IMG/VR virus record: IMGVR_UViG_3300042691_055965
Location: 1-64,000 of that record
Strand: one strand, 5' to 3'
DNA: 64,000 nt
Position numbers and translations under genes: made by a program. The notes beneath the pieces were generated by a model. It saw nothing but the letters and a program-made list of their open reading frames with translations. It did not search any database and was not told where the DNA came from. Below are positions 1 through 63,580 of the stretch, piece by piece; position 1 is the stretch's first letter; the number at the start of each line of letters is the position of its first letter.

Positions 1-453
1 ATGAAAAAAAATTTGAGAAAAGAATTACAAGAAATGAAGTTCTTGTTTGGATATGAAAGAGGTAGAGTTATTTCTGAGCAAAAAAACTTTCCAAAAGAAA
101 ACGATATGGAAATGATGGTTTCAGATGTAGAATTTGCTGAACCTGATACTGAAACAGAAAAGGAAGTTAAACCTGATGTTGATAGGGAAACAAGACCTTC
201 ACGACCTACAAGAAGAGAAAGAACATTCGATCCAAGTAGATTCGATCCGGCTACACGTCCTGAACCACACCCACAAGGTAGAGAAGAAGATGAGGTAGAG
301 TTTGAATTGGAACTTGATGACAAATACTTTGATGGTGCTGATGAAAAAATGTTTGATGCAGAAATTGATGAACCATATACTATGGACGTTGGTGATACTG
401 ATGTTGATTCTATTGAAGCTTTAGTAAAAAAATATTTAAATTCAAAAGGATGA
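1..453 (+). CDS. Acidic hypothetical protein with class-B leader (possibly head-associated)
   Basis: 150 aa ORF; N-terminus MKKNLRKELQEMKFLFGYERGRVISEQ resembles leaders at 15142-16800 and 19872; start is at the window edge. Confidence 0.7.
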   Translation: MKKNLRKELQEMKFLFGYERGRVISEQKNFPKENDMEMMVSDVEFAEPDTETEKEVKPDVDRETRPSRPTRRERTFDPSRFDPATRPEPHPQGREEDEVEFELELDDKYFDGADEKMFDAEIDEPYTMDVGDTDVDSIEALVKKYLNSKG

Positions 454-1436
454 AAAAAATAAACTTGTACGAAGCACCAATTGCTGACTATTTACCTGAT
501 GAATTCAAACAATACGCAAGACAATCTGCAAAAGAAAGTGAAGAATCAGGAACACCGGCAAACACTATGGAGTTTCAACGACTTATGATGGGGTTACCAT
601 CAATAGAAAGGGAACATAAAAGTGATTTGGTTGAATTGGCTGTAAATTCTTTTTATGAAATGTATCCCGATATTAAAAGTTGGGTTGATAAGGGAAGAAT
701 TGTAGTAGATGCAAATTTAGGTGGAGGTACTGGTGGACGTGTGTTACCTCAAACACCCGCAATGTCGGATATAGAAAAAGCAAAAGAAAAAGATCCTGAC
801 TTTGAAGAGCGTGTAAAAATGAGACATTACCAAAATGCGTTCACACAAGGTAAGGCTTGGGTTAATGGGTTTAATTATATTTTTAAAATTGATAATGAAC
901 TTGAAAATATCGACCCGAAGTTATATGATATGTATCGTTCATTTAGTAAGGGTGCTTCAAAATTCTATTGGGAAAATACAGAAATGCTTGAAAGAATGGC
1001 ACAACAAGCAACAGGTAGAGTTGCTTACTGTGATGTCACATTTTTACCTGATGGTAAAGTGAAAATTGAAGCAAGAGCCCCTGTCTTTCCTTTATTGTTA
1101 CACGAATTGGTAAAAGGTGGTGAATATTATCGTTCATTATTTTCTTTACCTAAAGATAGAGATGTAAGTAAAGCGATTACAAGTACAACCGATGTTCATA
1201 AACATGAAATTAAAAACATGAACTACGGTAGGGCTTTAGTTAATACAATTAGAGAAATTTTAAATAGAAGGGTTAAAGGGTATAGTCCTGATATGGAACC
1301 ACATTTGATGTCAGAATTGGAAGAAACTCTAACACCAAAAGAATTTAATGAAATTATGGATGGGATAGTAAGAAAAGATGAAGATAAAATCTTACGTTTC
1401 ATTATTAAATGTGAAAATATAGTAAAAGAATTATGA
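450..1436 (+). CDS. Phage hypothetical protein
   Basis: 328 aa ORF, ATGA-coupled to both neighbours; LLHELVKG motif, no confident family. Confidence 0.75.
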   Translation: MKKINLYEAPIADYLPDEFKQYARQSAKESEESGTPANTMEFQRLMMGLPSIEREHKSDLVELAVNSFYEMYPDIKSWVDKGRIVVDANLGGGTGGRVLPQTPAMSDIEKAKEKDPDFEERVKMRHYQNAFTQGKAWVNGFNYIFKIDNELENIDPKLYDMYRSFSKGASKFYWENTEMLERMAQQATGRVAYCDVTFLPDGKVKIEARAPVFPLLLHELVKGGEYYRSLFSLPKDRDVSKAITSTTDVHKHEIKNMNYGRALVNTIREILNRRVKGYSPDMEPHLMSELEETLTPKEFNEIMDGIVRKDEDKILRFIIKCENIVKEL

Positions 1437-1717
1437 GAACAAGAATAACTGAATCAGAAATTAATAGAATTGTTAAAAAAATTGTTTTAGAAGACAATCA
1501 ATTCGTTACAGGACCGGCAGCATCAGACAGAACTGAATTAGTTGATGACGTAATTAATAGAATTAATGAATTTGGTGACGAATACATTGCAGCATTAAAT
1601 GAATTAAATGCAGAATATCCTGTAAAACGATACAAACGTATGGAAAGACCTCGTAGAAGTGATTTCGAATTACCAAAAGGGGTTAGAGTACAAAGTTCTT
1701 ATTTTTCAGAAGATTAA
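1433..1717 (+). CDS. Small hypothetical protein with class-A leader
   Basis: 94 aa; starts MRTRITESEINRIVKKIVLE. Confidence 0.7.
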   Translation: MRTRITESEINRIVKKIVLEDNQFVTGPAASDRTELVDDVINRINEFGDEYIAALNELNAEYPVKRYKRMERPRRSDFELPKGVRVQSSYFSED

Positions 1718-1731
1718 AATAATCTTTTATT

Positions 1732-2373
1732 ATGGATGATAATAAGGTATTAAAAATATTTTCAAAGTTCATTGGACAAAAATATGTTAACATTGAAGGT
1801 ATTTTTTTTGAACCTGTTGAAATACTACCTACAGGTAGGGACATAGTGTTCAAAATGTACAATCCAAACGACATTTCGTATTTTGATTTAGCTTTAATAG
1901 ATGAATTGGAATCAATTTTATATGATTTCAAACAATATACCGAAATTTATTTAAAACCAATAATATCCAATTCAAAAAAAATATATTTTAATAAAGAATT
2001 GAAAGAAAAAATTGAAGAATTTTTTTCGTCTGTAAATAAATTAGATGTTTCTGACAAATATTTGAAACAAAAAATTGTAATTTACGGTAAAAGTGTGGGG
2101 TTCTATACTGAAACAGAAGAAGATAGACTTATTTTTTGGAATAAATTTATACCAAGTCGAGGATTCATTGAAAAATTACAAGACAATACAATTTTGACTG
2201 ACAATTTAGTTGAAACTATAGAAAATTATTATGATTTTTTAGAGCAAGACAGTTCTTATTGGGAATCCGAAAACATTTATATAAAAATGGATGTAATTTT
2301 GAACGATTATCCATTAGTTTCGCCTTCATGGATGGCAACTTATTATCACACAGCCTTTTTAAACTACACCTAA
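1732..2373 (+). CDS. Hypothetical protein
   Basis: 213 aa ORF; converges on and overlaps the uvrC end by 15 bp. Confidence 0.65.
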   Translation: MDDNKVLKIFSKFIGQKYVNIEGIFFEPVEILPTGRDIVFKMYNPNDISYFDLALIDELESILYDFKQYTEIYLKPIISNSKKIYFNKELKEKIEEFFSSVNKLDVSDKYLKQKIVIYGKSVGFYTETEEDRLIFWNKFIPSRGFIEKLQDNTILTDNLVETIENYYDFLEQDSSYWESENIYIKMDVILNDYPLVSPSWMATYYHTAFLNYT

Positions 2374-5039: not shown

Positions 5040-5648
5040 TTAAATAACATCTTGATTTTTTAAAAAATTAAATAACTCTTTTGCTAATTTTTTCCCGAAA
5101 CTAATATCTGATGGATAATGTGCTTTTGCCATTTGTCTTGAATAAACAATATCTTTTGCAATTTTTTCAAAATCACTTTTAAACTCAGGATACATATAAC
5201 TTAATATGTGACATAAAAGATATGATTGTGTAGAGTGTCCCGATGGGTATGCAAAACCTGTCATTGATTTTAACAAGATATCGTTCATGTCATTATCCAA
5301 TCTGAATGGACGTGGACGTTTGTAGAACATTTTTAATTCACGAACAACTTTTGATACGTCATAATGAATTTTTTCTAATTTTTCTTTTGGGTATTTTATA
5401 TTCTTTTCTTTTAAAAGTTCCACAAAATTTCCATAAATATCATCTTTTTCTTGAACAAATCTTTTGTTTAAATCTATAGTTTTTAAAAATTTAAGTTCGT
5501 TTTTTGTTTTTTGACTATTATCTGCTGGTGGGGGAAATGACTTGAATTTATTTAAATCAAACTTTTTGAACACACCCAAGTCATGTTCTTGATTATTTTC
5601 CAATAACATAAGTTTTTGGATTCTGTTTATTTTTTCATTCAATATCAT
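5040..5648 (-). CDS. PAP2-family (acid phosphatase/haloperoxidase-like) phosphatase with class-B leader
   Basis: Motifs KxxxxRPRP, AYPSGHS, SRxxAKAHYPSD; N-terminus MILNEKINRIQKLMLLE. Confidence 0.85.
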   Translation of the reverse strand: MILNEKINRIQKLMLLENNQEHDLGVFKKFDLNKFKSFPPPADNSQKTKNELKFLKTIDLNKRFVQEKDDIYGNFVELLKEKNIKYPKEKLEKIHYDVSKVVRELKMFYKRPRPFRLDNDMNDILLKSMTGFAYPSGHSTQSYLLCHILSYMYPEFKSDFEKIAKDIVYSRQMAKAHYPSDISFGKKLAKELFNFLKNQDVI

Positions 5649-9071: not shown

Positions 9072-9104
9072 ATAGTTTTAGAAAGATTTGTGATATTTAT
9101 ATGT

Positions 9105-15142: not shown

Positions 15143-16800
15143 TACCTATAAGATCTTCCGTACGTTTTTCTGTTTTGTTTATATGCTGGTATCGTGCCTG
15201 TCCTTCTGGCATAATCTCTATCGTTTGATTTATTTCTACGTCTTTGTTTACTTGCACTCATCCAATCAGATGCACCTGAATGATCAACATATTGTGCTTT
15301 CATCCTTCCAGTAGTGTAAGAATACGAACTAAAACCAAAACCTCCCCCTTGTTTTCCAATGTATTCAAGAGAAATGACATTATTAGCAATTTTACCTGTT
15401 AGTTCACTTTCTGCCGAAATTTTAATATTACCAAGAATTGTTACCCTAACATAAAAAGTAAAATTAGCATACTGACCAGGATTCGGTAAAGTTTTGGTAG
15501 GATCATTATCAAGTTTACCTCCAGTATCAGTTACTTTATAATACATATCAACATTATCATATATGTTTTCAGATACTATTATATCTGTATTTTGTTTGAA
15601 TTTTGAAACTATACTTTGTACTAAAAGATCACCTCTTTTCTTTGCAAGTGCTGCATTTTTTAAATTATTACCTGTCTTTTCTATATTTTCAATTTTTTTA
15701 ACAAATTCATCATCATTTGTGTGTGTCACGTCCAAAACATCAGTCCCCGTCCAAGTATTACTTGCTGAAGATTCTGAATATACTTTATATATTTCTATTC
15801 TATATGATACGTCACATTCACCACTACGATTACATTCAATCATTTCTTTCAGTGTTTTACTATCTGAATCACCTTTTGGTTTTTCATAATCAATTTTTGT
15901 AGAATATAAAGTGTTATATATTGTTTCCATAGCACTTTCTAAAAACGGTTTTGGGTCTGATGCCCCCGGATCATAATTTGTTTCTATTTTTGGTATTTCT
16001 ATCATTTTGGATGCTTTAGTTTCTTTTACATTTGCATCTCTTAATTTTGCGGGTTTTACTTCTTCTTCTTCAGTAGTGATTATGAAAGATAATGGTTTTT
16101 TTGTTACAGGAACATAATTAAATGTGCCATCCTCATTATTTCCTGCATAAACTGATTGAGAATTAGATAATACCACATCTTCTTCACATTCATAATCAAA
16201 CTTATTTGTTAATGCTGTTTGTAGTGCTGTTTTCAATCCGGTTAATTCTTCAGGTTCGACTTCAGCAATCAAAGACAAATCTACAGACTTGTATTCTTCT
16301 GGAAGTACTTCATTGTTCATTACAAATTTCCATCTTTGTGCTTTCTTGAAGAATTTTTTTAATTTTCTAATTTCTTTTTTTTGTGATTTGTCAGTTTGTT
16401 TAGAAATGTATACTCTTGGGTCATCCAATATAGTATTAAGTGCGTTATAAAATGCCTCACCTAATTTTATTCTTTGTTCACCTGTCAATTTATTATACTC
16501 CGCAAAAGAAGAAAGTTCGGCATTCATTTTTTGGGTGACATTCGCAGGTTTTGTTAGTTCTTCATCGACTTCTTTGTCGTATGTAAATTCCCCGCCAATG
16601 TTAAGTGAACCACGGGTTATATCTCTTAATTGATTTCTACCTCCACCTAAATTCAAATTAAAACTTTTAGTTTTTGGTTCATTAATTTCTAAAATTAAAT
16701 TTTCAGAACTCAAATCAGATTGCTCATTCAAAGTTTTACCTACTTTGTAAGAATTTAAAAAATTAATTTTATTAATTTCTTCTAACAATTTTTTGTCCAT
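15142..16800 (-). CDS. Large hypothetical protein with class-B leader
   Basis: 552 aa; MDKKLLEEINKINFLNSYKVGKTLNEQ; minus-strand TATTTAT at 16814-16820. Confidence 0.8.
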   Translation of the reverse strand: MDKKLLEEINKINFLNSYKVGKTLNEQSDLSSENLILEINEPKTKSFNLNLGGGRNQLRDITRGSLNIGGEFTYDKEVDEELTKPANVTQKMNAELSSFAEYNKLTGEQRIKLGEAFYNALNTILDDPRVYISKQTDKSQKKEIRKLKKFFKKAQRWKFVMNNEVLPEEYKSVDLSLIAEVEPEELTGLKTALQTALTNKFDYECEEDVVLSNSQSVYAGNNEDGTFNYVPVTKKPLSFIITTEEEEVKPAKLRDANVKETKASKMIEIPKIETNYDPGASDPKPFLESAMETIYNTLYSTKIDYEKPKGDSDSKTLKEMIECNRSGECDVSYRIEIYKVYSESSASNTWTGTDVLDVTHTNDDEFVKKIENIEKTGNNLKNAALAKKRGDLLVQSIVSKFKQNTDIIVSENIYDNVDMYYKVTDTGGKLDNDPTKTLPNPGQYANFTFYVRVTILGNIKISAESELTGKIANNVISLEYIGKQGGGFGFSSYSYTTGRMKAQYVDHSGASDWMSASKQRRRNKSNDRDYARRTGTIPAYKQNRKTYGRSYR

Positions 16801-19862: not shown

Positions 19863-19871
19863 TTAATCGTA

Positions 19872-22133
19872 ATGAAAAAAATAATTGAAGAAGAAATACT
19901 AAGACAGTTACAACTTATTAATTTTGATAAAGGTAAAACTATTAGTGAACAATATATGGCTGGTGGTGGACGTGAAATTGCGGCAGCAACATATGAAACG
20001 TCAAAATACATACAAGATGAGAATAAAAAAGAAGATGAAAGTTATCAATACCTTTATGATAAATGGGCACCATATGTTTGTGGAACAGGTGGTGGTGGAA
20101 TAAGTCCTGATAATTCCTTTGGTGCGGTAGCAGGGTATTGTGATTGGGTAAAAAATGGTTTAACACCTTTTGATATTTGTAATTCTCCAATAGTTGATGT
20201 AAAATATAATCATCCAACAAAAGATTTTTACCCATTGAATTATGCTCAAGAAGTTAATAAAAGAAGAAAAGAAGGAAAAAAATACGTCCAAACAGGTGGA
20301 GGTATTGTCGTAAAAAAAGAAAAAGGATATCTTTATAATACATATTGGTGCGAATGTAAAAAAGATGTGGAATTTTATGCACCTACTGAATATAATTCTA
20401 ACTTACCTACGGGTTCATTTTTCAAATTGGACGGTCCTTTGAATTTGAAGTATGTGACAAATGTCCCAACAGTAACAAGTGTTAATGATTGGTTTGACTT
20501 GAAAAAATGTACAGCAACAAATAAAGCTGAGGAGGTTGTTGATAAATATTTTCATACAGTTGCTCCATTCATATCATTAGTGTTGAATTTTTTCGGTCCC
20601 ATTGGTATGGCTTTAGGTGCAGTTATTGAATTTGCGGATGGTGTAAAATATCAAGAAGAAGGTAATACATATGCTGCGGGTTTGTCATATACTTTTGCCG
20701 CATTAGGTCCTTTAGATTTTGGTTTGAGCCCTTTTATTAAATCAAGTGGGAATTCTTTGATAAAAAAAACCTTGATAAAATCCTCAAAATATAGTGTAAA
20801 TGAAATTAAACTTTTGCAATTTCTAAAAAATACAAACCAAACTATGCGATTGGTAAGATTGGGAACTGCTTTTAAATTTGTAAGAGTTGCTATGACATAT
20901 ATAATGAAGTCAAAAATATTCGGATTATTTCTTCTAAAACTTATTAATCTTGGTGTTGCAACAACAGCTATTTTATCGAAATTAGGTTTAATCATTGGTG
21001 GGGGGTTTATTGGTTGGGATTACATTGCATACAAATATGAAATCCAAAATACCATGCCACTTGTTGAATTAAAAAAATCAAATTGGAAAATTTTGAAACT
21101 TCTTGGTGATTTAGGTCCTCATTTACAACCGTTTACTACAGGTGTCATGTCAACAAATCCTGAAGTTGAAAAAATATTTGAAGAATTTGACAAAGAAATT
21201 TCTATGAAAAACAGAATAATAAACGTTATACAAGATAATATCGAAAGTGGTGAAGAGTTTAGTGAAAAATTATCAAAAGTGTACAGCGTTGACTTAGTAT
21301 TCATTCAAATGGCGTTAGAAAGTTTAGGGTTTGCAAAAAATATATCATCTAGTTTTACAGTATATAAAAGTTCTACTTTGTGGGGTTTTAAAAATGCCGT
21401 CAACATTCAAAAAATTCAAATGTTTGCACGTAATACTTTAACAGGAATAGGGGTACTTTCGATGAAATCATTAGAAGCTGTAGAATCAAACTTGACAGAA
21501 AAAGATGGAACGTTAGTACAAGAATGGAACCCTTATAACGGTCGTCCTATTACTTATGTTTATTTGAAAAGGGATATTGGTAAAAAACATTTTTTAATAA
21601 TAACCGACAAATTTGGTAAGAAAAAATCAATAAATTTAAATAGTTCTTTTGAAGAAATGTCATTTGGAATGAAGACTGCGGATGTTGACACAAGTTTCCA
21701 CTGGGGATTTTTTGACAATTTTACAAAGGCATCAGTTATGGAATTTCAGAAAAAAAATGGTATATCACCGTCAGATGGTATTGCAGGAACAAAAACATTA
21801 ATAAAGTTACAAAATATATTAAAATCAAAAAGTGATGAAGTTAAAAATTATGCAAACATAAATTACACTGACGAAGAAATTGATGAACTTAGAGAAGAAC
21901 TCTTAGATAGTCTTGAAGATGTTAAAAAACGTACAGATAAAAAAATGTTAATTTCTGAAAAAGATATGCAAAATGCATACATAAAACAAAAAAATGGATT
22001 AATTAATGAAGCTGAAATATTTTTAAATAAAAATTATGAAGGTCTTAATGTTTCAGACACTACTGTTTATGAAGTAGAATTATTTTTAGAAAAGGCTAAA
22101 AATGGTAGTTTAACAGAAAACGATTTAAAATAA
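19872..22133 (+). CDS. Large putative virion/ejection protein with hydrophobic helices and PG-binding-like domain
   Basis: Class-B leader; FISLVLNFFGPIGMALGAVI segment; TKASVMEFQKKNGI..DGIAGTKT PG-binding motif. Confidence 0.7.
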   Translation: MKKIIEEEILRQLQLINFDKGKTISEQYMAGGGREIAAATYETSKYIQDENKKEDESYQYLYDKWAPYVCGTGGGGISPDNSFGAVAGYCDWVKNGLTPFDICNSPIVDVKYNHPTKDFYPLNYAQEVNKRRKEGKKYVQTGGGIVVKKEKGYLYNTYWCECKKDVEFYAPTEYNSNLPTGSFFKLDGPLNLKYVTNVPTVTSVNDWFDLKKCTATNKAEEVVDKYFHTVAPFISLVLNFFGPIGMALGAVIEFADGVKYQEEGNTYAAGLSYTFAALGPLDFGLSPFIKSSGNSLIKKTLIKSSKYSVNEIKLLQFLKNTNQTMRLVRLGTAFKFVRVAMTYIMKSKIFGLFLLKLINLGVATTAILSKLGLIIGGGFIGWDYIAYKYEIQNTMPLVELKKSNWKILKLLGDLGPHLQPFTTGVMSTNPEVEKIFEEFDKEISMKNRIINVIQDNIESGEEFSEKLSKVYSVDLVFIQMALESLGFAKNISSSFTVYKSSTLWGFKNAVNIQKIQMFARNTLTGIGVLSMKSLEAVESNLTEKDGTLVQEWNPYNGRPITYVYLKRDIGKKHFLIITDKFGKKKSINLNSSFEEMSFGMKTADVDTSFHWGFFDNFTKASVMEFQKKNGISPSDGIAGTKTLIKLQNILKSKSDEVKNYANINYTDEEIDELREELLDSLEDVKKRTDKKMLISEKDMQNAYIKQKNGLINEAEIFLNKNYEGLNVSDTTVYEVELFLEKAKNGSLTENDLK

Positions 22134-22138: not shown

Positions 22139-25135
22139 ATGGAAAAGGAAATTTTACAAGAAATAACAAGGTATCAAACATTGATGGGTATTGAACCAAA
22201 AAAACCTTTGATGAACGAAGGTGCGGAATTAATGGCAATAATACGAGCATCGTCTAGTGCGGCAGCTAAAAACCTTGACGACTTGGTAAAAATAGTAAGA
22301 AAGTCGGCGGTGGAAGGTGTTGAACTTCTTGATAGTGAAATTGATGATTTAGTTGAATATGCGAAAAGTACAGGAAAATATACTGAAGATGAAATTGAAA
22401 TCTTAAGAACTTTTTTTAAAAAACCAAAAGTTAAGACTAAAATTTCTTCAGGTAATGGTTTTAGAACATTAGATGATCTTGTAGATGATATAACAGAATC
22501 AGAAGCAAAAGTTTTAACTACTTTGTATAAATTAACCGATGATGAAATTTCTTCAATAGTTAGTGTACGAAGTGATAGTTTTTTCAAAAATAAACCAAAA
22601 ACTCAATGGGAAACTGATCTTGAAACTTCAATCGTTGATTCAATGGAAAAAGGAAAAAATGAAGGGAAGATTATGGAAACTGCAGAAGTACCTTATAATG
22701 AAATAGATAAGTTAATAGATAAAAAATATCCGGTTACTGATAATATGTCTCCTGTTGAACGAGCGGTTAATGAAGGGACTAGAAAAAATCTAAAACAAAG
22801 ATTTAGGGAATCAGTTCCAATTAAAGAAAAAATAAAAGAACTTGAACTAAATGGAAATATAAAAGAATCTTCAGTAAAAGTAGAACCTATTTCAGACGTT
22901 GCATCTTCTTCTAGTAAAACCGTTAAAAGACAGGTTCCAGATCCTCAAGGGATAGGTGCACCTAGAACTGAAGAATTAGATGAACTTCTTTCAGAATTTT
23001 ACTATGACATACTTGATAAAGTTAAGACTAAAGGTGAAGAAAGTTTGACACCTATTGAAAAAGAAATAGTTGAATCTGTTGAAAATTGGAAATCTGGTAA
23101 ATCCATCGATGCTGAAAAACTAACAACCAAGTACAGAAATCAACCATCTAAATTTATTTACGACTACGTTGATGAATTGAAAAATTCTACAGACGAATTA
23201 ACACCTAACGAACAAAAGTTAGTAGATGCATTAGAAGATTTTGAAAAAAATGGAACTGAATATAAATGGTATACATTAGCTGACGAAGCAATGGAACCTT
23301 TTGTTCTTACAGTTGATAATTTAGGTACAACGTTCAAACGAATTTCCAGTGAATGGAATTTGATGTATTTACTTAAAAAAGTGTTAGTTCCGTTTGATTA
23401 TTTCTACACAGTCATCTTTCGACCGACATTAAGATGGGCAAATGCAAGTTTTGATATATTCTTACAAAATTGGTCTATGCGTATCAAAAACGGAACTTTA
23501 AAATTAGATTTTGATGTTGCTGCGCGCGAATTCACAGAAACAATGGGTAAATCTTTTGATAATTATATTAAAAGCGGGGGTAATTTAGGTTTACGAGATA
23601 TTAGAAAAATGCAAGAAAGATTAATGTATTTGAAAACATATTCACCGTTGGCTGAAGGTTCTCAGATTGAAAAAATGTTACTTGAAGAAACTTGGGAGAT
23701 TTTTAAAACTAACGCAAGAACTAAAGTACCACCAGAAAATATTAAGGATTGGGACACTTTTATTAGATTGTTTGAATCAGAAGGGGAAGGATCGTTATCT
23801 ATATCAACCCGTGAAATTTTGGGAGACGCTCCTCCTTTGAAGACTGACCCTGATCAAACAACTGTGAAAACAACTTTCAGAGAAAAAATAAAAAAGGCGT
23901 GGGCTGATGGTGTTCAAAGTAATGGTAAAACCGTTTTGAATTCACTTTTCCAAAAATTTATAGATGGATTAGGTAATCTTGTGTCTTTAGTTTTTACTGG
24001 AACGGTACTTCGACCTAAAACAATTCAAAGACAATTTTTAAAATATGGTATGACGCAAAAGAATGCTATATGTACTGCAATGTCTATATATGCGGTGCAA
24101 AAAGTTTTATTACCTATTTTAGGTGCCGTTGTCTATGGTGCTCTTTTAGGTCTCGAAAGATCTGAAGGTATTAAAAACAAATATGTTGAAAAATATGGTA
24201 CTGGTTGGGGGTATTATTGGCATTTCTATTTTGTTGATCCGGTAATTGAATGGACTTTAGGAAATGGTCCTGTTGATGAAGTTGCGTCTGTCGCAACAGA
24301 TTTGTTACCTAAAAAATGGAAAGATTCTAAAGAAATGATAAACAAAGTTGCAAAGTTGGAAATCGAAACATCATGGGGTGATTTTTTAAATTGGGCTATT
24401 GAAGGTTGGGGTGATGATATAGTCACTGAAATTATTGAACTATCATTCGTGGCAGCGACTGAAGGAGGTGATACTGTTGAAGAAATTGCAGAAATGGTTG
24501 AAATTAATAGTGTAAATCAAACAACTATCGATGAATATGAAAACTTACAGAATGAACTTAAAAATGCCGAGGAAAGACTAAAAAATGCTAAAAATGAACA
24601 AAGTAAAAATAAAGCGAAATATGATATCGCAATTGCTAACGAAAAAATTAATGGAGTACAAATTGGTGCGTTTTTAAATGAAGCAAAATATGCAATAAAC
24701 GATATTTTTGGTAAAGGTACTGACGCTGCGGAAAATATGATATCTAGACTAGAATTTGTTCCATATTTACCAAACGATTACTTAGAAAGAGTTAAGAAAA
24801 ATTTAAAAGATAATAATTATAATGTAACTTTGAAAAATTTGGCAAATTTATCAAGTGATATAAAAAATAATACTGAACTATACACTAAAAAAATTCAAGA
24901 AGAAATAACAAAAAATAGAAAAGGGTCAGTACTTATAAAAGGGGATAAGGATAAGTACTTATTAGTGGTTAATTCACCAAATTTTGAACTTGATTTAACT
25001 CCTGATGAGTTTTCGACTATATTTGATGGTGAATCTGTTGCTTGGGTGTCCCCAAGTATGAAGAACATAAAACCAAACACAGAAAGAACCTATGGAACTT
25101 TAAAAGACTTCTATAAAAATATGAAAAATTTATAA
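22139..25135 (+). CDS. 998-aa helical protein with TM-like segments (putative ejection/virion protein)
   Basis: Leader MEKEILQEITRYQTLMGI; hydrophobic segments at about aa 610-665. Confidence 0.75.
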   Translation: MEKEILQEITRYQTLMGIEPKKPLMNEGAELMAIIRASSSAAAKNLDDLVKIVRKSAVEGVELLDSEIDDLVEYAKSTGKYTEDEIEILRTFFKKPKVKTKISSGNGFRTLDDLVDDITESEAKVLTTLYKLTDDEISSIVSVRSDSFFKNKPKTQWETDLETSIVDSMEKGKNEGKIMETAEVPYNEIDKLIDKKYPVTDNMSPVERAVNEGTRKNLKQRFRESVPIKEKIKELELNGNIKESSVKVEPISDVASSSSKTVKRQVPDPQGIGAPRTEELDELLSEFYYDILDKVKTKGEESLTPIEKEIVESVENWKSGKSIDAEKLTTKYRNQPSKFIYDYVDELKNSTDELTPNEQKLVDALEDFEKNGTEYKWYTLADEAMEPFVLTVDNLGTTFKRISSEWNLMYLLKKVLVPFDYFYTVIFRPTLRWANASFDIFLQNWSMRIKNGTLKLDFDVAAREFTETMGKSFDNYIKSGGNLGLRDIRKMQERLMYLKTYSPLAEGSQIEKMLLEETWEIFKTNARTKVPPENIKDWDTFIRLFESEGEGSLSISTREILGDAPPLKTDPDQTTVKTTFREKIKKAWADGVQSNGKTVLNSLFQKFIDGLGNLVSLVFTGTVLRPKTIQRQFLKYGMTQKNAICTAMSIYAVQKVLLPILGAVVYGALLGLERSEGIKNKYVEKYGTGWGYYWHFYFVDPVIEWTLGNGPVDEVASVATDLLPKKWKDSKEMINKVAKLEIETSWGDFLNWAIEGWGDDIVTEIIELSFVAATEGGDTVEEIAEMVEINSVNQTTIDEYENLQNELKNAEERLKNAKNEQSKNKAKYDIAIANEKINGVQIGAFLNEAKYAINDIFGKGTDAAENMISRLEFVPYLPNDYLERVKKNLKDNNYNVTLKNLANLSSDIKNNTELYTKKIQEEITKNRKGSVLIKGDKDKYLLVVNSPNFELDLTPDEFSTIFDGESVAWVSPSMKNIKPNTERTYGTLKDFYKNMKNL

Positions 25136-26017: not shown

Positions 26018-28435
26018 ATGAAAAGAATTTTCACTATATCTGAACAAGAAAAAAGTGCAATATTGGAAAAATATTACCTTTTGAAAGAAGTAGATACCCG
26101 TAATTGCTCTGAAGGTGATTGTGTTGATGGTGAAGGTACACTTGTAATCAATAGTAAGTTCGGTAATGTTGAAGTAGAAAAAACTTTCATTGGTACTTTT
26201 AAAAAAAGTATTCTAACTAACGGGGAAATCACAATCAATACCGGTGTTAATACAACATATCAGAGTGGAAATTTCAAGAATGGGGAACTTTTAACTGGAG
26301 AAGGTTTGTACATACAAGAAGTACCAAGTGAAAACTTTAGACAAGTCACAAAAGGTACGTTTGTTGATGGGTATTTAACTAAAGGTACGACTGAAGTCAC
26401 TATATCTTCAATGAGTTTTACTATTAAAAGTGACAATGTTGTTAAAAACACTTATAAGGATGCTGAAATTAAATTTAATGACGGATCAATATATTATGGA
26501 GACATTACGGACAACACATCAAATTTTGAATTCAAATCGAAAACAAAGGGTTTAGAAACTGATGATTTAGTTCAATTTCATATAAAAACAGAAGGAAGTC
26601 AATCAGATGTTGAACGGACAACTAGTACACCCACAGTAACTCCAAGTGTGTCTACAAATTCTACAAATACTGATACTAAAATAACAGATGAATTAAGGGC
26701 TAAATGGACAGGTTGTGAATATACGGCTGACGACTTGTTCCGATTCAACAAACCCGAAGATGATTATGTCACAGAAATACCAGAACTAGGTTATTTCAAA
26801 TTTGAAGGTGAAGTTGATGGTAAAAACATAAAAGTAAACGCTTGTTTTGACAACTTCAAATTAATTAAAACACAAGAAGGAAATGAGACAGGTGATAGGG
26901 GTGAATTTAATGGTGTATACTATAGTGAGGATGATGGATTACCTTTAAAATTTGAAGGAGATGAATCCAAAGCTAATAAGTTCAAAAGAGGAAGATTACT
27001 AAATTCACCTGACTACGATTTTCATGTCGAAAAGTTTGAATACATAGGAACATTTGACAATGGTATCATTCATAGTCCAAAAATTAGTGAAGGTTCTTCT
27101 GTTGAAAATATATTCGCAAAATCTGAAATACTTTTCGAAGATAATTCATATTATAATGGAAATTTTGAAAATGGTAAAATAAAAGGTTACGGCATTTTTA
27201 CAATCCCAAGTAAAGGAAAATTTGAAGGCGAATTTGAACAAGTAAAAAATGATAACGGCAATACCACATATAAAGTTACATTATCGAATGGTGCGGTTAT
27301 TGAAGATTTGATGGATTATGCCTCGAAAGTAAAATTTAGTACTGATAAAACCACTGATACATATTTGGGTGTTTTAAAAGGGGCTAAAGTAAATGGAACC
27401 GTTTTTTATCAATCAGTATATACTTTGAAAACTGATGATGGAAAAAAGACAGAAAACACTTATAAGGGTGGCTTGATGGGTGCCACCGTTGTTTTAAAAT
27501 CCAAATCATCTGAAATTGAAACGGAAGGTGAAATAATAAAAGGTAAAACATTTGAAACCACCACAGATGAAAATGGTAAATTTACATTTGATGGTGTTCC
27601 ATACGGAACTTATGATATAAAAATTAGATTTGGTGATAAATTGTCACCGTATTTTAAATACGATGCTGAAAATTTAAAAATCGATTCGAATAAAACGTAT
27701 GAGATTACAACAGTTAAAACAAAAAAACTTGAAAAAAGGGAACAAGATTATTTAGATCAAGAAAGTTTCAGTGCTGAAGATTTAGAAGACTTTACAGAAG
27801 AAAATTACAAAAATCTTATTTTAAAATCATTATTGAAATCCCATAAGGATGATTCTACTTATGTTGAGGATATTTTGGATGGTACTTTTAAACAAAAATA
27901 TGGAAAAAGAACCGCTTTAAAATTTTGTACCACTCAATTCAATAATTATGCCGATGAATTGAAACAAGTGTATTTGAAAAAAGTAAGTGATGCGTCTATA
28001 AAATCCGCAGAAGAAATAGAACCATCTAAAAAAGTTTTACAATATTGTTGGAATAATTACAAAGAGGAATTATCAAAAAAAATTAAAAAGGATGACTTGA
28101 GTTTAATCCAACAACCTGGTGGAAAACTATTAGTATATCAAGTTGATTTGAAAGAAAATTACAATAGACAATATATTTATACTAAAGAAAATGATATGAA
28201 AGAAACTATAAAAAATATCATTAAAGAACATGCAAGAATTAAGAAGATTCAATCATCTACTGAATCTAAAATTATTGAAAACCGTTTGAATTTCATTTTT
28301 GAAGACAGCACGGGTTATACAACAAGAAACAAAATCAGAAAAAATTTATTGAGTGAAAAAAACCAACTCCTTTATATGGGGTATACACCAAAACTTGTAA
28401 ATGAAATTTTTAATAGGTTTATGGTAAAAATATAG
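26018..28435 (+). CDS. MORN-like repeat protein with carboxypeptidase-regulatory-like beta domain
   Basis: CSEGDCVDGEG, YYNGNFENGKIKGYG, TTTDENGKFTFDGVPYGTYDI; leader MKRIFTISEQEKSAILE. Confidence 0.7.
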   Translation: MKRIFTISEQEKSAILEKYYLLKEVDTRNCSEGDCVDGEGTLVINSKFGNVEVEKTFIGTFKKSILTNGEITINTGVNTTYQSGNFKNGELLTGEGLYIQEVPSENFRQVTKGTFVDGYLTKGTTEVTISSMSFTIKSDNVVKNTYKDAEIKFNDGSIYYGDITDNTSNFEFKSKTKGLETDDLVQFHIKTEGSQSDVERTTSTPTVTPSVSTNSTNTDTKITDELRAKWTGCEYTADDLFRFNKPEDDYVTEIPELGYFKFEGEVDGKNIKVNACFDNFKLIKTQEGNETGDRGEFNGVYYSEDDGLPLKFEGDESKANKFKRGRLLNSPDYDFHVEKFEYIGTFDNGIIHSPKISEGSSVENIFAKSEILFEDNSYYNGNFENGKIKGYGIFTIPSKGKFEGEFEQVKNDNGNTTYKVTLSNGAVIEDLMDYASKVKFSTDKTTDTYLGVLKGAKVNGTVFYQSVYTLKTDDGKKTENTYKGGLMGATVVLKSKSSEIETEGEIIKGKTFETTTDENGKFTFDGVPYGTYDIKIRFGDKLSPYFKYDAENLKIDSNKTYEITTVKTKKLEKREQDYLDQESFSAEDLEDFTEENYKNLILKSLLKSHKDDSTYVEDILDGTFKQKYGKRTALKFCTTQFNNYADELKQVYLKKVSDASIKSAEEIEPSKKVLQYCWNNYKEELSKKIKKDDLSLIQQPGGKLLVYQVDLKENYNRQYIYTKENDMKETIKNIIKEHARIKKIQSSTESKIIENRLNFIFEDSTGYTTRNKIRKNLLSEKNQLLYMGYTPKLVNEIFNRFMVKI

Positions 28436-42176: not shown

Positions 42177-42188
42177 TATTTATATAAT

Positions 42189-60556: not shown

Positions 60557-61264
60557 ATGAAAATATTAGGACCTAGTGATATTGGTAAAGGGATTTTAAT
60601 TGAACACGACGCAGGATTAATCAGTTTAAATGATGTAAGAAATAATAAAACAATAAATGAATCCTACGGACAATTAGATTATTCTAAACCATTTGTATTT
60701 TATGCGACACTACAAAAATACGGTGTACCAAACAGAAACGGAAGGGTATACCCTGAAAAAATATTGAAAAGAGAAGCCGAAAAGTACAAAGAAATGATTA
60801 ATAAAGGGATGTCAATTTCGGAATTAAATCACCCTGAATCATCTTTAATTGATTTGGACAGAGTTTCACATTTAATAACAGATGTATGGTGGGAAGGTAA
60901 CGTACTTATGGGTAAAATTAAATTACTTACAACACCAGGATTCCATGAAAGAGGTATTGTATCGTCTAAAGGCGATATTGCAGCAAACATGATGAGACAA
61001 GGGGTTACTATGGGTGTGTCTTCGCGTGGGGTTGGTTCATTGGTTAAGAAAGGTGAACAAAATGAAGTGCAAGAAGATTTTGAACTAATATGTTTCGACT
61101 TGGTATCTTCACCTTCTACACCTGGAGCATATCTATACTTAAATAAAGAAGATAGACCTAAATATGAAGAAAAACTTACAGAGCATGAAAATGTAAATTC
61201 TTTTGGCGGTTTAGAAAAATCAGTTGACTTAATGAAAAGATTATCCGATTATTTGGGTAAATAA
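60557..61264 (+). CDS. Prohead core protease (T4 gp21-like)
   Basis: NRNGRVYP, ELNHP, VSH, GVSSRGVGS, FDLVSSPSTPGA. Confidence 0.95.
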   Translation: MKILGPSDIGKGILIEHDAGLISLNDVRNNKTINESYGQLDYSKPFVFYATLQKYGVPNRNGRVYPEKILKREAEKYKEMINKGMSISELNHPESSLIDLDRVSHLITDVWWEGNVLMGKIKLLTTPGFHERGIVSSKGDIAANMMRQGVTMGVSSRGVGSLVKKGEQNEVQEDFELICFDLVSSPSTPGAYLYLNKEDRPKYEEKLTEHENVNSFGGLEKSVDLMKRLSDYLGK

Positions 61265-61582: not shown

Positions 61583-61879
61583 ATGAAAAAAATTAACCGT
61601 CTGACTGAAAGAGATTTAACACGAATTGTTAAACGTGTAATCAAAGAAGAAGAAGATGATAATAAAAAGGAAAGTAAAGGAATGTCTATAACAATAAAGG
61701 ATGTGTTTGATGAAGTTGTTAACGCACTTAAGGAGTTAGGGGATTACGATGACTCGATGAAAGGAAAAGCAATGAAATTGGCTAAAAAAATTATGTCTAA
61801 TTTCAAAGATGATTTGGCTTATATTTCTGATAACCACGAGGACGAATTATACGATATTCTTGGTGAAGAAAATTATTGA
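61583..61879 (+). CDS. Small protein with class-A leader
   Basis: MKKINRLTERDLTRIVKRVIKEE; TATTTAT at 61546-61552. Confidence 0.75.
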   Translation: MKKINRLTERDLTRIVKRVIKEEEDDNKKESKGMSITIKDVFDEVVNALKELGDYDDSMKGKAMKLAKKIMSNFKDDLAYISDNHEDELYDILGEENY

Positions 61880-61902: not shown

Positions 61903-61923
61903 AAGGACACGTAATGTGTCCTT
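61903..61923. terminator. Hairpin terminator, right copy (exact reverse complement of 61510-61530)
   Basis: AAGGACAC-GTAAT-GTGTCCTT plus T-run. Confidence 0.8.
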
Positions 61924-61990
61924 TTTTTGTTTTATTGAACTTTTTTTTGTCTGACATTATCCAAAAATAAACTTTTTTTAACTTGCTACA

Positions 61991-61997
61991 TATTTAT
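61991..61997 (+). promoter_or_regulatory. TATTTAT putative phage late promoter (representative of >20 copies)
   Basis: Recurs 4-45 nt upstream of start codons of structural/late genes on both strands. Confidence 0.6.
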
Positions 61998-62032
61998 TTG
62001 GTAAATAAACGCATAATGTATTGCATTTAAAA

Positions 62033-63580
62033 ATGGGAATAAATGAAAATAAATCGGTAGTTGAAGAGGCTTTATTACAAATAAAGAACCTTGAAGACGC
62101 TATCAATGAAAACGCAAAAGGAATACTTGCTTCAACTATGAAGGAAGAAATCAGTGAATTAGTAAAAGAATCATTAGGTGGTTACAAAAAAAATCTACGG
62201 GAACAAGACGCTCCTGAAGAACCAGAAGGTGAAGAAGAAGTTGATGTTGACTTAGAAGACGAAACGGAAGTTGAACCTGAAGGTGAGGAAATTGACTTTT
62301 CTGCGGTAGAAAAATTTAATGAACCGCAAGGTGATGAAGAAGTAGGCGATTTTTCCGACCTAGAAGAACCTATGATGGGTGATAATGAAACGGGTAATGA
62401 AATGCCACCACTTGATATGACATCAGCTTCCCCTGAAGAAATTTTGAAAGTATTCAAAGCGATGGGTGATGAAGATGGAATCATTGTTAAAAAAGACGAT
62501 GATTATATCCATTTGTCAGATAATCAAAAGGATGTTGAATATCTTATAAGTGTTGGTGATGAACCCGAAGAAACAGAAGAAACTCAAATGGCAGAAAATG
62601 TGATATATGAGTTAGAAGTTGAAGAATCAGAAAACATGGACTTTAATTTGTTTATGGACGAAGAAGAAGAATTTGAAGGTATGTACATGGACGAAGAAGA
62701 AGAATTTGAAGGTATGTACATGGACGAAGAAGAAGAATTTGAAGGTATGTACATGGACGAAGAAGAAGAACAAGAAGAAACAGTTTATGAAATCGATGAA
62801 GAAGATTTGGAATCCGTAATGGAGGCATTCAAAGCTGTTGGACTTGGTTTTGGAAAACCGATGAAAACTTTTTCTAAAATGGAAGTAAACGACAAAGGAT
62901 TCAAGGATGATAAAAAACAAGGTGAAAATCTGAAAAGAAAAGGTCCGAAGTTTAAATATCCAAAAATCAAACATGGTGTTACTGAAATGGAAGATAAAGA
63001 AATGGATGAAGAATGGAATGAAGAAGAATACAACGAAGGAATGGATTACCATGAAGAAGAAGCAGAAACAAAAGAAGCTGCTAGAACATATGGTAAAGGT
63101 TCTAAACGTGGTAGAGGCTTAAGAAAAGGGGTCACTCCAAACAGAAACTTAGTTTACGGTGAAAACGGTGTTCATTCTGAATCAGTACAAAATGAAATCA
63201 ATGTTTTAAGAGAAAAAAATGAAGAGTACAAAAAGGCTCTTGACTTCTTTAGAAACAAATTGAATGAAGTTGCTGTATTTAATTCCAATTTGGCGTATTC
63301 AACAAGATTGTTCACTGAACATTCAACTACTAAACAAGAAAAGATTAACATTCTTAGAAGATTTGACGAAGTCGATACTTTGAAAGAATCAAAATCTTTG
63401 TACAAAACAATTAAAACAGAATTAGATGGAAAAGGTTCATCTAATACAATAAAAGAATCTATCGAAAGACGAGTTGTTAAAACACCATCTAATGGTTCAT
63501 CAACAAATCTAATCGAAAGTAAAACGTATGAAAATCCACAATTCTTAAGAATGAAGGATTTGATGACAAAAATAAAATAA
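62033..63580 (+). CDS. Prohead scaffold/core protein (T4 gp22-like)
   Basis: Highly acidic with coiled-coil C-half; located between protease and MCP; likely ATG at 62033. Confidence 0.8.
   Translation: MGINENKSVVEEALLQIKNLEDAINENAKGILASTMKEEISELVKESLGGYKKNLREQDAPEEPEGEEEVDVDLEDETEVEPEGEEIDFSAVEKFNEPQGDEEVGDFSDLEEPMMGDNETGNEMPPLDMTSASPEEILKVFKAMGDEDGIIVKKDDDYIHLSDNQKDVEYLISVGDEPEETEETQMAENVIYELEVEESENMDFNLFMDEEEEFEGMYMDEEEEFEGMYMDEEEEFEGMYMDEEEEQEETVYEIDEEDLESVMEAFKAVGLGFGKPMKTFSKMEVNDKGFKDDKKQGENLKRKGPKFKYPKIKHGVTEMEDKEMDEEWNEEEYNEGMDYHEEEAETKEAARTYGKGSKRGRGLRKGVTPNRNLVYGENGVHSESVQNEINVLREKNEEYKKALDFFRNKLNEVAVFNSNLAYSTRLFTEHSTTKQEKINILRRFDEVDTLKESKSLYKTIKTELDGKGSSNTIKESIERRVVKTPSNGSSTNLIESKTYENPQFLRMKDLMTKIK
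62654..62770 (+). repeat. Perfect 33-bp tandem repeat x3.5 (MDEEEEFEGMY)
   Basis: ATGGACGAAGAAGAAGAATTTGAAGGTATGTAC repeated in frame. Confidence 0.95.

What the first reader, a model, noticed from the sequence alone, without database searches (positions are those of the whole stretch)
1..63580. Class-B N-terminal leader resembling the scaffold C-terminus: a possible capsid-loading tag
Seen: unrelated proteins start with a similar amphipathic helix: LRKELQEMKFLFGYERGRVISEQ (1), LNEKINRIQKLMLLE (PAP2, 5648-), LLEEINKINFLNSYKVGKTLNEQ (16800-), IIEDIRRIRQLMVLE (19452), IEEEILRQLQLINFDKGKTISEQ (19872), ILQEITRYQTLMGI (22139). Three extend to an aromatic-x-x-G-[KR]-x-[IL]-[SN]-E-Q end. The scaffold ends with a similar helix (ENPQFLRMKDLMTKIK). 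Established: T4 internal proteins carry a short capsid-targeting leader, and gp21 cleaves after Glu in [LI]-x-E contexts; here the MCP has LINE/A at residue 60. Inference: a leader that docks cargo in the prohead and is then clipped off, packaging many proteins for injection.
Basis: partly seen in the sequence, partly recalled or inferred. Interest (0 to 1): 0.8.

Follow-up and report, generated by a model that had tools for sequence, protein, structure and literature searches.

The report
Scaffold-tail-like leader on phage cargo proteins
Many unrelated proteins of this uncultured T4-like jumbo phage begin with the same short helix-plus-cleavage-site peptide, which in related phages is a near copy of the scaffold protein's tail, so it is most likely an address label that loads cargo into the capsid and is then cut off.

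Summary
Six ORFs in the window start with the class-B leader. There are two forms: helix + x-Y-x-x-G-K-x-[IL]-[SN]-E-Q, and a shorter helix ending in L-M-x-[LI]-E.

A profile of the long form finds 712 protein clusters among 1.84 billion representatives. The match is almost always at residues 1-30, on at least 35 unrelated cargo types. No Pfam model, PDB entry or searchable paper covers it.

The phage has a T4-type head module: gp20 portal, gp21 protease with His and Ser kept, a scaffold, and a gp23 MCP with an invariant LINE|A site.

The key new result concerns the scaffold tail. In the sibling clade, R-M-[QK]-K-L-A-G-I occurs only in two places. One is the extreme C-terminus of the scaffold (103/121 matches, 95 with an MCP gene in the same locus). 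The other is the extreme N-terminus of diverse proteins (17/121), always followed by [LIVM]-x-E. The cultured Flavobacterium phage immuto shows the same pairing.

Inside the window the leader/tail resemblance is only motif-level, and for the long form it is not significant.

Best reading (about 0.6): a capsid-targeting propeptide that copies the scaffold's docking helix and is removed by the gp21-like protease. Packaging and cleavage are untested. This is a new variant of the T4 capsid-targeting-sequence idea.

The parts
1..78 (+). Long-form class-B leader (residues 1-26, MKKNLRKELQEMKFLFGYERGRVISE, then Q) of the 150-aa ORF 1-453
   Evidence: best window match to the 130-sequence leader profile (48 bits); AF2 gives a helix at residues 2-16
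5598..5648 (-). Short-form leader (residues 1-17, MILNEKINRIQKLMLLE) of the soluble PAP2-domain protein, ORF 5040-5648
   Evidence: ranks 6-10 of about 40,000 positions against the sibling-clade leader consensus
16723..16800 (-). Long-form leader (residues 1-26, ...FLNSYKVGKTLNE, then Q) of the 552-aa ORF 15142-16800
   Evidence: kept on the ortholog in L082
19452..19505 (+). Short-form leader (residues 1-18, MNLIIEDIRRIRQLMVLE) of the 136-aa ORF 19452-19862. This is the first gene of a run of three leader genes that precedes the tail-fibre genes
   Evidence: TATTTAT motif 13 nt upstream
19872..19949 (+). Long-form leader (residues 1-26, ...LINFDKGKTISE, then Q) of the 753-aa protein with a PG_binding_1 domain, ORF 19872-22133
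   Evidence: the L082 ortholog keeps a leader
22139..22219 (+). Leader of the 998-aa ORF 22139-25135: helix EILQEITRYQTLMGIE, then PKKPLMNE|G. There are two candidate [LIM]-x-E sites, at residues 19 and 27
   Evidence: rank 1 of about 40,000 window positions against the sibling-clade leader consensus
60557..61264 (+). Prohead protease, a homolog of T4 gp21; the presumed enzyme that removes the leaders
   Evidence: phrog_207 at 2.8e-45; PDB 5jbl at 9.5e-16. The window protein has His and Ser at the two positions where native T4 gp21 (read) has His and Ser and the 5jbl crystal chain has Ala
62021..63580 (+). Putative scaffold (gp22-like by position): acidic, with internal repeats, lying between the protease and the MCP
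   Evidence: gene order portal-protease-scaffold-MCP as in T4; weak homology to the gene at the same position in phage immuto
63518..63577 (+). Scaffold C-terminal tail SKTYENPQFLRMKDLMTKIK, preceded by a conserved NLIE| site
   Evidence: almost invariant in about 30 relatives whose scaffold bodies are only 42-80% identical; carries the R-M-K-x-L-M motif shared with the short leaders
63614..63793 (+). MCP (gp23-like) N-terminal propeptide, residues 1-60, ending in LINE|A
   Evidence: Pfam Gp23; nearly unchanged in 22 distinct relatives, with LINE|A invariant; ends 9 residues before the segment that aligns with residues 26-62 of mature T4 gp23*
26018..26044 (+). Possible minimal leader MKRIFTISE|Q on the 805-aa ORF 26018-28435 (candidate only)
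61583..61648 (+). Class-A leader MKKINRLTERDLTRIVKRVIKE| on a 98-aa protein that lies inside the head module, between the protease and the scaffold. Class-A leaders also occur at 1433, 3697, 4283, 50164 and 50713
   Evidence: class A and class B co-occur in related contigs

Best explanation
The class-B leader is a capsid (prohead-core) targeting propeptide. It consists of an amphipathic helix of about 12-16 residues that copies the docking helix at the C-terminus of the phage's own scaffold protein. A short linker follows, ending in a [LIV]-x-E site.

Proposed mechanism:
1. During prohead assembly the helix occupies the same binding site as the scaffold tail. That site is most likely on the inner face or the N-terminal propeptide of the gp23-like MCP, or on the scaffold core.
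2. Whatever protein is attached is thereby co-assembled inside the shell.
3. When the gp21-like protease is activated it cuts after the Glu. This frees the cargo inside the head, just as it clips the MCP at LINE|A and the scaffold at NLIE|S.
4. The cargo would then leave with the DNA at infection.

What is shown: the leader is real, N-terminal, modular and under protein-level selection. The phage has a T4-type protease, scaffold and MCP. In sister lineages the leader and the scaffold tail are the same peptide. A [LIVM]-x-E site always follows the helix.

What is inferred: binding, packaging, cleavage and ejection.
For: 1. Modularity. The leader profile A3 finds 712 clusters at E<=1e-3 (95 at <=1e-10) among 1.84e9 representative proteins. 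The match is at residues 1-30 in nearly all of the 150 listed. Their cargos fall into at least 35 unrelated blastp groups.

2. Protein-level selection. Conserved residues use several synonymous codons.

3. T4-type maturation machinery. The protease is a gp21 homolog with His and Ser kept. The MCP LINE|A site is invariant and positioned as T4's LTE|A. gp21 cleaves after L/I-x-E (PMC9026906).

4. Scaffold-tail identity.
- In IMG/VR, R-M-[QK]-K-L-A-G-I lies 0-2 residues from the C-terminus of 260-610-aa proteins in 103 of 121 matches, and 95 of those loci also hold a gp23-like MCP gene. It lies at the extreme N-terminus of diverse 62-355-aa proteins in 17 of 121.
- In the cultured phage immuto, the scaffold tail SEQVSRWQKLAGIIK is the top non-leader match to the leaders SEQF[RK]RMQ[KF]LAGII in 135,620 six-frame residues (score 48 against 26 for background).

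5. The two lineages differ in step. The window lineage has L-M in both the tail and the short leaders. The sibling clade has L-A-G in both.

6. Cleavage site. 18 of 18 sibling-clade leaders have [LIVM]-x-E within 10 residues after the helix, against a background of 0.45. Scaffold tails have such a site at a fixed distance upstream (47 of 70).

7. An external probe, the sibling-clade consensus, ranks the window's three short leaders 1st, 6-10th and 39-47th of about 40,000 positions.

8. AF2 gives a helix at residues 2-16 followed by a non-helical stretch that holds the cleavage site. The helix is amphipathic.

9. Co-regulation hint. A TATTTAT motif lies upstream of 27 of 66 genes. These include the scaffold, the protease, tail-fibre genes and all 10 testable leader-bearing transcription units, but not UvrC, ClpB, DenV or the kinases.

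10. Some leader genes sit inside or next to head modules (L102, L197).

11. Precedent. The T4 internal proteins are diverse cargos that share only a 10-residue capsid-targeting sequence removed by gp21 (PMC3012670, PMC9026906).
Against: - There is no virion proteome or N-terminal data for this phage or any relative, so packaging and cleavage are untested.
- Within the window, the leader/tail similarity is a six-residue motif written after seeing the data. The long-form helix does not match the tail significantly. Its link to the short form rests on intermediate sequences (L104, P0076).
- The residue after the Glu is Gln, Asp, Asn or Pro in the leaders but Ala in the MCP. The GIE|P site of ORF 22139 is an unlikely serine-protease site, although LMNE|G follows eight residues later.
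- Some cargos are large (753 and 998 aa) and have hydrophobic segments. They lie next to tail-fibre genes, so a tail location cannot be excluded.
- PG-binding domains are the only recognisable cargo theme. They are also typical of tail-associated lysins.
- T4's own scaffold has no such tail, so the partner of the tail cannot be taken over from T4 data.
Confidence: 0.6

Rival explanations
1. The leader is a docking tag that copies the scaffold tail, but it serves another assembly purpose. It might attach proteins to the scaffold core, portal or protease only transiently. Or it might deliver proteins to the tail or baseplate, without the proteins being stored in the head and injected.
For: Leader genes 19452-25135 and 26018 run directly into the tail-fibre and baseplate genes. 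The 753-aa cargo has hydrophobic segments and a PG-binding domain, as tape-measure and tail-lysin proteins do. PG-binding domains are the only recurring cargo domain. The partner of the tail is unknown.
Against: The copied peptide is the tail of the head scaffold, which acts only inside the prohead. Small acidic cargos of 100-200 aa resemble T4 internal proteins more than tail parts. Some leader genes lie inside head modules (L197).
Confidence: 0.2
2. The leader is a removable pro-sequence without a targeting role. It might keep an enzyme inactive until the protease acts. Or it might recruit a chaperone, as the T4 gp23 N-terminus recruits GroEL.
For: All forms end in a protease-type site. T4 propeptides are credited with chaperonin recruitment as well as targeting (PMC10052503, discussion). 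Phage immuto encodes GroES and GroEL.
Against: A mere inhibitory peptide would not be the same on at least 35 unrelated cargos. It also would not be identical to the scaffold tail. The prohead protease is active only inside the prohead, so a substrate has to get there first.
Confidence: 0.08
3. The shared 5' segment is mainly a nucleic-acid element: a recombination cassette for shuffling genes, or a translation or regulatory signal. On this view the peptide is a by-product.
For: Some codon choices recur, for example CTT for the Leu at leader position 11 in 15 of 20 cases. This fits spread by duplication or recombination. Leader genes occur in tandem (L105, L096).
Against: There is plenty of synonymous variation at conserved residues. 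The same peptide occurs at the 3' end of the scaffold gene, where no 5' signal is needed. The amino-acid profile recovers 712 clusters.
Confidence: 0.05
4. The motifs are chance products of an AT-rich genome whose proteins are rich in Lys, Glu, Ile and Leu.
For: [LI]-x-E is common in this proteome; the scaffold alone has 25 [LIVM]-x-E sites.
Against: Shuffle tests give 0 of 1000 for each motif. 712 clusters carry the leader at a fixed N-terminal position. The tail motif is absent from 813,407 other six-frame residues.
Confidence: 0.01

Closest known systems
T4 capsid targeting sequence (CTS) of internal proteins IPI, IPII, IPIII and Alt, removed by gp21
   Same: A short N-terminal peptide shared by otherwise unrelated proteins. 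It ends in an L/I-x-E| site. The phage has gp21-, gp22- and gp23-type head genes. In T4 the cargos are diverse proteins delivered into the host (PMC3012670, PMC9026906, PMC9958956).
   Different: There is no sequence similarity to MKTYQEFIAE. The leader is longer (17-27 aa against 10) and has a defined helix. It comes in several classes per genome. It is demonstrably a copy of the scaffold's C-terminal tail, which T4 gp22 lacks. No functional data exist.
Scaffold C-terminal coat-binding helices and their mimics (P22 scaffold; 80alpha gp46 and SaPI1 CpmB; herpesvirus and lambda-type protease/scaffold nested genes that share a C-terminus).
   Same: A short basic amphipathic terminal helix is the piece that docks on the HK97-fold shell. 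Other proteins gain access to the procapsid by carrying the same helix.
   Different: Here the copy sits at the N-terminus of the passenger, not the C-terminus. It is followed by a protease site. It has spread to hundreds of unrelated protein families rather than to one protease or one size-redirecting protein.
Encapsulin cargo-loading peptides (from my own knowledge)
   Same: A short terminal peptide on diverse cargo proteins directs them to the interior of an HK97-fold shell.
   Different: Encapsulins have no scaffold, no protease and no DNA. Their peptide is not removed. There is no sequence relation.
Propeptides of giant-phage head and ejection proteins (phiKZ, 201phi2-1, SPN3US)
   Same: Many head proteins have N-terminal propeptides that are cut after Glu by a gp21-related protease (PMC10052503, PMC9026906).
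   Different: According to the papers read here, those propeptides are mostly long (111-254 aa) and are not described as one shared portable motif. Their cleavage motif is A/S-x-E rather than [LIV]-x-E.
P1 DarB N-terminal packaging signal
   Same: The N-terminal 30 residues are sufficient to send a reporter protein into the capsid (PMC9024508).
   Different: P1 is a different phage lineage. No relation to a scaffold tail has been reported, and no family-wide motif.

Membership tests
T4-type capsid targeting sequence / gp21-processed propeptide | A short N-terminal peptide shared by otherwise unrelated proteins of one phage | tested here: met
   Six ORFs share only the N-terminus; 712 clusters and at least 35 cargo groups
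T4-type capsid targeting sequence / gp21-processed propeptide | The peptide ends in the protease recognition context L/I-x-E | tested here: met
   VISE, TLNE, TISE, LLE, VLE, GIE/MNE; 18 of 18 in the sibling clade. This is sequence evidence only
T4-type capsid targeting sequence / gp21-processed propeptide | The genome encodes a gp21-family protease, a scaffold and a gp23-family MCP with a processed N-terminus | tested here: met
T4-type capsid targeting sequence / gp21-processed propeptide | Sequence homology to the T4 CTS (MKTYQEFIAE) | tested here: not met
   Inspection shows no resemblance; the T4 head genes were read. The window leader therefore works like a CTS but is not a member by descent
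T4-type capsid targeting sequence / gp21-processed propeptide | The cargo is present in virions with the leader removed, and the leader is sufficient to package a reporter | not testable with these tools
   Needs virion mass spectrometry and fusion experiments
Scaffold-tail mimic (same peptide as the scaffold C-terminus) | The leader helix and the tail of the scaffold in the same genome are significantly alike | tested here: inconclusive
   Met in phage immuto and across the sibling clade. In the window it holds only at motif level for the short form. It is not significant for the long form
Sec/Tat/lipoprotein signal peptide | A hydrophobic core of 10-20 residues after a basic N-region | tested here: not met
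   The leaders are charged and amphipathic with no hydrophobic stretch
Encapsulin cargo-loading peptide | An encapsulin shell gene next to the cargo, and a peptide that is retained rather than cleaved | tested here: not met
   The shell is a phage gp23-type MCP with portal, terminase and protease
Any curated protein family that covers the leader | A match of the leader region to a Pfam, PHROG or PDB entry | tested here: not met
   No model covers residues 1-30; no paper holds the motif strings

The most novel reading that the evidence does not exclude
Cargo loading in a large, mostly uncultured clade of T4-like phages works by copying the scaffold's docking helix onto the N-terminus of any protein, followed by a protease site. 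If that is so, the packaged and injected proteome of these phages can be read from sequence alone. It would comprise hundreds of protein families, plausibly including anti-defence and cell-wall-active proteins. The long-unexplained way in which T4's capsid-targeting sequences find the core would then become a testable scaffold-mimicry model. As a hint in that direction, T4 gp22 begins MLKEQLIAE|A, which is close to the internal-protein leader MKTYQEFIAE.
Probability: 0.4. Interest if true: 0.85.

Novelty: new variant of a known kind. Interest (0 to 1): 0.74.

Why it matters
Reviews of T4 head assembly still describe as unresolved how certain proteins are localised to the scaffolding core (PMC9958956). 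Here the same peptide is found in two places: at the end of the scaffold, and at the start of many unrelated proteins, always next to a protease site. This gives a concrete mechanism that can be proved wrong: passengers compete for, or share, the scaffold's docking site.

It also gives a sequence rule for listing proteins that are probably packaged and injected in uncultured jumbo phages. In T4 and P1 such proteins are counter-defence factors.

It points as well to a natural, compact tag of about 20 residues for loading foreign proteins into T4-like capsids.

Flavobacterium phage immuto is cultured and carries the motif on two genes and on its scaffold, so the idea can be tested directly at the bench.

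Tried and rejected
- tblastn of the window leader against 50,697 phage records found nothing. The same search with the immuto leader found only immuto, and with the Mel-JY01 scaffold tail only itself plus noise.
- The word-indexed protein search restricted to residues 1-40 gave only 3 near-identical hits. The exhaustive profile search was needed.
- A back-translated search with the three short leaders (A2) returned only the window's own contig.
- HMMs built from exact RM[QK]KLAGI instances are too narrow. They did not score the window's leaders or tail significantly. The long-form helix profile did not pick out the scaffold tail either. I therefore do not claim significance for the resemblance inside the window.
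- ESM Atlas searches on the 753-aa and 998-aa cargos gave no usable lead.
- The leader profile found nothing in the PDB.
- Megablast of the head module against cultured phages found no match. The nearest cultured portals are 37-39% identical.
- The worry that the PAP2 cargo is a membrane protein, and so unpackageable, was rejected: it has no transmembrane-like segment.
- A purely nucleic-acid explanation was rejected because of synonymous variation and because the peptide also occurs at the 3' end of the scaffold gene.
- blastp found no similarity between the window's 753/998/805-aa proteins and immuto's annotated tape-measure region. A tape-measure identity could be neither shown nor excluded.

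Full report
**What the window is**

The window is the first 64 kb of a 229,188-bp IMG/VR contig. GC content is 30%. No close cultured relative exists; the nearest cultured portals are 37-39% identical, in Microcystis phage Mel-JY01 and Flavobacterium phage immuto.

It carries a T4-type head module:
- large terminase at 55192-56967 and gp20-type portal at 57008-58807;
- gp21-type prohead protease at 60557-61264 (phrog_207 at 2.8e-45; PDB 5jbl at 9.5e-16). The window protein has His and Ser at the two positions where native T4 gp21 (read) has His and Ser and the crystal chain has Ala;
- an acidic, repeat-containing ORF at 62021-63580 in the scaffold position;
- the first 129 residues of a gp23-type MCP from 63614.

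A CHU_C/SprB protein that would be sorted by the type IX secretion system points to a Bacteroidota host.

**The observation**

- Three have the long form: a helix, then aromatic-x-x-G-[KR]-x-[IL]-[SN]-E-Q, starting at residue 18 in every case.
- Three have a short form: I-x-R-[IY]-[QR]-x-L-M-x-[LI]-E.

Beyond the first 25-45 residues, the six proteins share nothing detectable.

Shuffle tests:
- the long-form end: 3 observed, 0.00 expected;
- [IL][SN]EQ: 8 observed against 0.82 expected, with 6 in the first 45 residues against 0.12 expected;
- R[IYM][QRK].LM: 4 observed against 0.02 expected. These are the three short leaders and residue 510 of the 519-residue scaffold.

**How widespread the leader is**

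A back-translated search with the three long leaders found 23 viral contigs. The same peptide starts proteins of 109-648 aa, which diverge immediately after ...ISEQ.

A 24-sequence profile (A3) was run against 1.84 billion representative proteins. It gave 712 clusters at E<=1e-3 and 95 at <=1e-10. Nearly all of the 150 listed matches lie at residues 1-30. The few at residues 11-50 are upstream start-codon calls. Four proteins carry a second, internal copy preceded by ...VTE|S.

The cargos of the listed hits form at least 35 unrelated blastp groups. Of 70 scanned against Pfam, only peptidoglycan-binding domains recur: PG_binding_1 in 6, and PG_binding_3 and OmpA in one each. No model covers the leader. 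There is no PDB relative, and no paper in the library contains the motif strings.

Conserved residues use several synonymous codons, so selection acts on the peptide.

In 185,579 species genomes the long leader gave a single hit, on a 2.9-kb MAG contig.

**The maturation context**

The MCP N-terminus is nearly unchanged in 22 distinct relatives, with the LINE|A site invariant. The segment starting 9 residues further on (FETVVFPIVRR...) aligns with residues 26-62 of mature T4 gp23*. T4's own propeptide ends FLTE|A. In the cultured relatives the equivalent sites are QIVSE|A (immuto) and QLISE|A (Mel-JY01). These are very close to the leader's VISE|Q. T4 gp21 cleaves after L/I-x-E (PMC9026906).

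**The scaffold tail: the main new result**

Within the window's lineage, the last 24 residues of the scaffold (...NLIE-S-KTYENPQF[LM]RMKDLMxKIK) are almost invariant. The rest of the protein is only 42-80% identical.

In phage immuto the scaffold ends ...IISEVSEQVSRWQKLAGIIK. Two otherwise unrelated proteins, gp083 and gp230, begin MKKQILSEQF[RK]RMQ[KF]LAGIITES. In 135,620 six-frame residues, the scaffold tail is the best non-leader match to the leader 14-mer (score 48; the next best is 26). Mel-JY01's scaffold ends ...ILNESNNVVERMKKLAGIVK.

I then scanned IMG/VR for DNA encoding R-M-[QK]-K-L-A-G-I. Of 121 matches:
- 103 lie 0-2 residues from the C-terminus of 260-610-aa proteins. In 95 of those loci a gp23-like MCP gene lies in the same locus, so these are scaffolds.
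- 17 lie at the extreme N-terminus of diverse 62-355-aa proteins (MKKQILSEEFxRMQKLAGIITE...). Five of those loci also hold a portal, protease or MCP of the same clade.
- One is unclassifiable.

All 18 distinct N-terminal copies are followed within 10 residues by [LIVM]-x-E, against a background of 0.45 per window. 70 of 98 scaffold tails have such a site upstream, and in 47 of those it sits exactly 6 residues before the Arg.

So in this clade one peptide has two uses. It is the end of the scaffold, and it is an N-terminal tag on passengers. In both cases a protease-type site separates it from the rest of the protein.

**How far this carries over to the window**

The evidence here is weaker, and I keep it separate.
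- The window's short leaders and its scaffold tail share R-hydrophobic-[KRQ]-x-L-M. That pattern occurs nowhere else in the window. It also occurs nowhere else in 813,407 six-frame residues of related loci. However, I wrote the pattern after seeing the data.
- Neither ungapped BLOSUM scoring of the tail nor the HMMs link the tail to the leaders significantly.
- An independent probe does better. Against about 40,000 window positions, the sibling-clade consensus leader ranks the 22139 leader 1st, the 5040 leader 6-10th, the 19452 leader 39-47th, and the tail 37th.
- The two lineages differ in step: L-M in both tail and short leaders here, L-A-G in both there.
- The long form is tied to the short form only through intermediates (L104 ...EELNRVRLLMNYDTKKTLSE; P0076 ...DIDKIKTLMSIKPSKLISE). 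Its helix consensus (E-E-L-N-x-M-K-Y-L-F) shares only M-K-x-L-[FM] with the tail.

**Shape and expression**

AF2 on the leader alignment gives a helix at residues 2-16 and a non-helical remainder that holds the cleavage site (pLDDT 77). The helices are mostly amphipathic, at the 83rd-97th percentile of hydrophobic moment; one is at the 55th.

A TATTTAT motif occurs 59 times in the window. It lies in the sense orientation within 50 nt upstream of 27 of 66 genes, where about 1.3 would be expected. Those genes include the scaffold, the protease, tail-fibre genes and all 10 testable leader-bearing transcription units. The motif is absent before UvrC, ClpB, DenV, the kinases and the response regulator. 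This suggests, but does not prove, that leader genes are co-expressed with structural genes.

**Interpretation**

The best-supported reading is a capsid-targeting propeptide that borrows the scaffold's docking helix and is removed by the gp21-like protease. In function it parallels the T4 internal-protein capsid-targeting sequence (PMC3012670, PMC9026906, PMC9958956). In sequence it is unrelated, so it works like a CTS without being a member of that family by descent.

Rival readings:
- a docking tag for another assembly step, or for tail proteins. The tail-gene neighbourhood, the hydrophobic segments and the PG-binding domain of the 753-aa cargo favour this;
- a pro-sequence with no targeting role;
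- a nucleic-acid cassette;
- chance.

The last two are essentially excluded.

Nothing here shows packaging, cleavage or injection. The tail's partner is inferred by analogy with other phage scaffolds, from my own knowledge. T4 gp22 has no such tail.

**Novelty**

The leader is a new variant of a known kind. Capsid-targeting leaders and protease-removed propeptides are established. What I could not find in Pfam, the PDB or the searchable literature is the following combination:
- a family-wide portable leader on hundreds of protein families;
- its identity with the scaffold tail;
- several leader classes within one genome.

Noticed in passing
window 1433-1492, 3697-3750, 4283-4351, 50164-50229, 50713-50778, 61583-61648 (all +): A second leader class ('class A': MK..[IR]LTESDLxRIVxRVIxE|) on six further ORFs. 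One of them lies inside the head module, between the protease and the scaffold. It shares 52% identity over 19 residues with a short class-B leader (1433 against 5040). It co-occurs with class B in related contigs.
   Followed up: partly
L120 (ORFs from 733, 1038, 1798, 4090) and L210 (ORFs from 3052, 4212, 5002, 6090): A third N-terminal leader class in sibling-clade contigs: many adjacent genes begin MIKL[TSAV][DN]IL[KN]E... That is about 10 residues ending in L-x-E, the length and form of the T4 capsid-targeting sequence.
   Followed up: no
window-wide, e.g. 4263, 5648, 16809, 28174, 52878, 60536: A promoter-like motif TATTTAT(A) lies 11-44 nt upstream of 27 of 66 genes (about 1.3 expected). 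It marks head, tail-fibre and leader genes but not repair, chaperone or kinase genes. In several cases it overlaps the T4 late-promoter word TATAAATA.
   Followed up: partly
window 52929-54260 (+): A 443-aa acidic protein with DMDTGEPPMG-type repeats, weakly similar to the scaffold (E 3.6e-5). Its N-terminus is leader-like (…NKIQRILEIARYNE). It also has internal MKKLNLMAG and LKSIQRLTG segments that score high against the RMQKLAGI consensus. It may be a second core or scaffold protein.
   Followed up: no
P0004, P0005, P0006, P0076: Proteins with two leaders: one N-terminal and one internal, the latter preceded by ...VTE|S and followed by a PG-binding domain. They look like fusions of two leader-cargo units, that is, a small polyprotein.
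   Followed up: no
L113:2618-3427 (T4 gene 22): T4 gp22 begins MLKEQLIAE|A, close to the T4 internal-protein leader MKTYQEFIAE. In T4 the targeting sequence may therefore resemble the N-terminus of the scaffold. I did not test this for significance.
   Followed up: no
window 6775-8985, 9090-10865, 10862-12277, 12270-12707 (+): The phage carries a SprB-repeat protein with a CHU_C type IX secretion sorting domain. It also carries two paralogous proteins with a histidine-kinase ATPase domain, and a response-regulator receiver protein. This is an unusual signalling and surface-protein set for a phage, and it marks the host as Bacteroidota.
   Followed up: partly
window 2359-3639 (-), 44049-44528 (-), 47997-50045 (-), 46923-47975 (-): A UvrC-like nuclease (GIY-YIG plus the UvrC RNase H domain), a pyrimidine-dimer glycosylase, a ClpB-like double-AAA ATPase and a weak match to an M42 peptidase. 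Together these are repair and chaperone genes.
   Followed up: no
window about 62650-62770 (+): Within the scaffold there are three or four tandem copies of an 11-residue acidic unit (MYMDEEEEFEG).
   Followed up: no
window 29416-44064 (+): A large tail-fibre region with internal paralogy: three 232-241-aa paralogs (31223-33361), two 236-237-aa paralogs at 55% identity (41466-42902), and an 1810-aa fibre protein that shares repeats with ORFs 29416 and 33407.
   Followed up: no
window 5675-6109 (+): A Dps/ferritin-like protein (DUF5856, phrog_858) has a 20-residue N-terminal extension ending MISE|Q. If this is a real leader, a cage-forming protein would be a capsid passenger.
   Followed up: no
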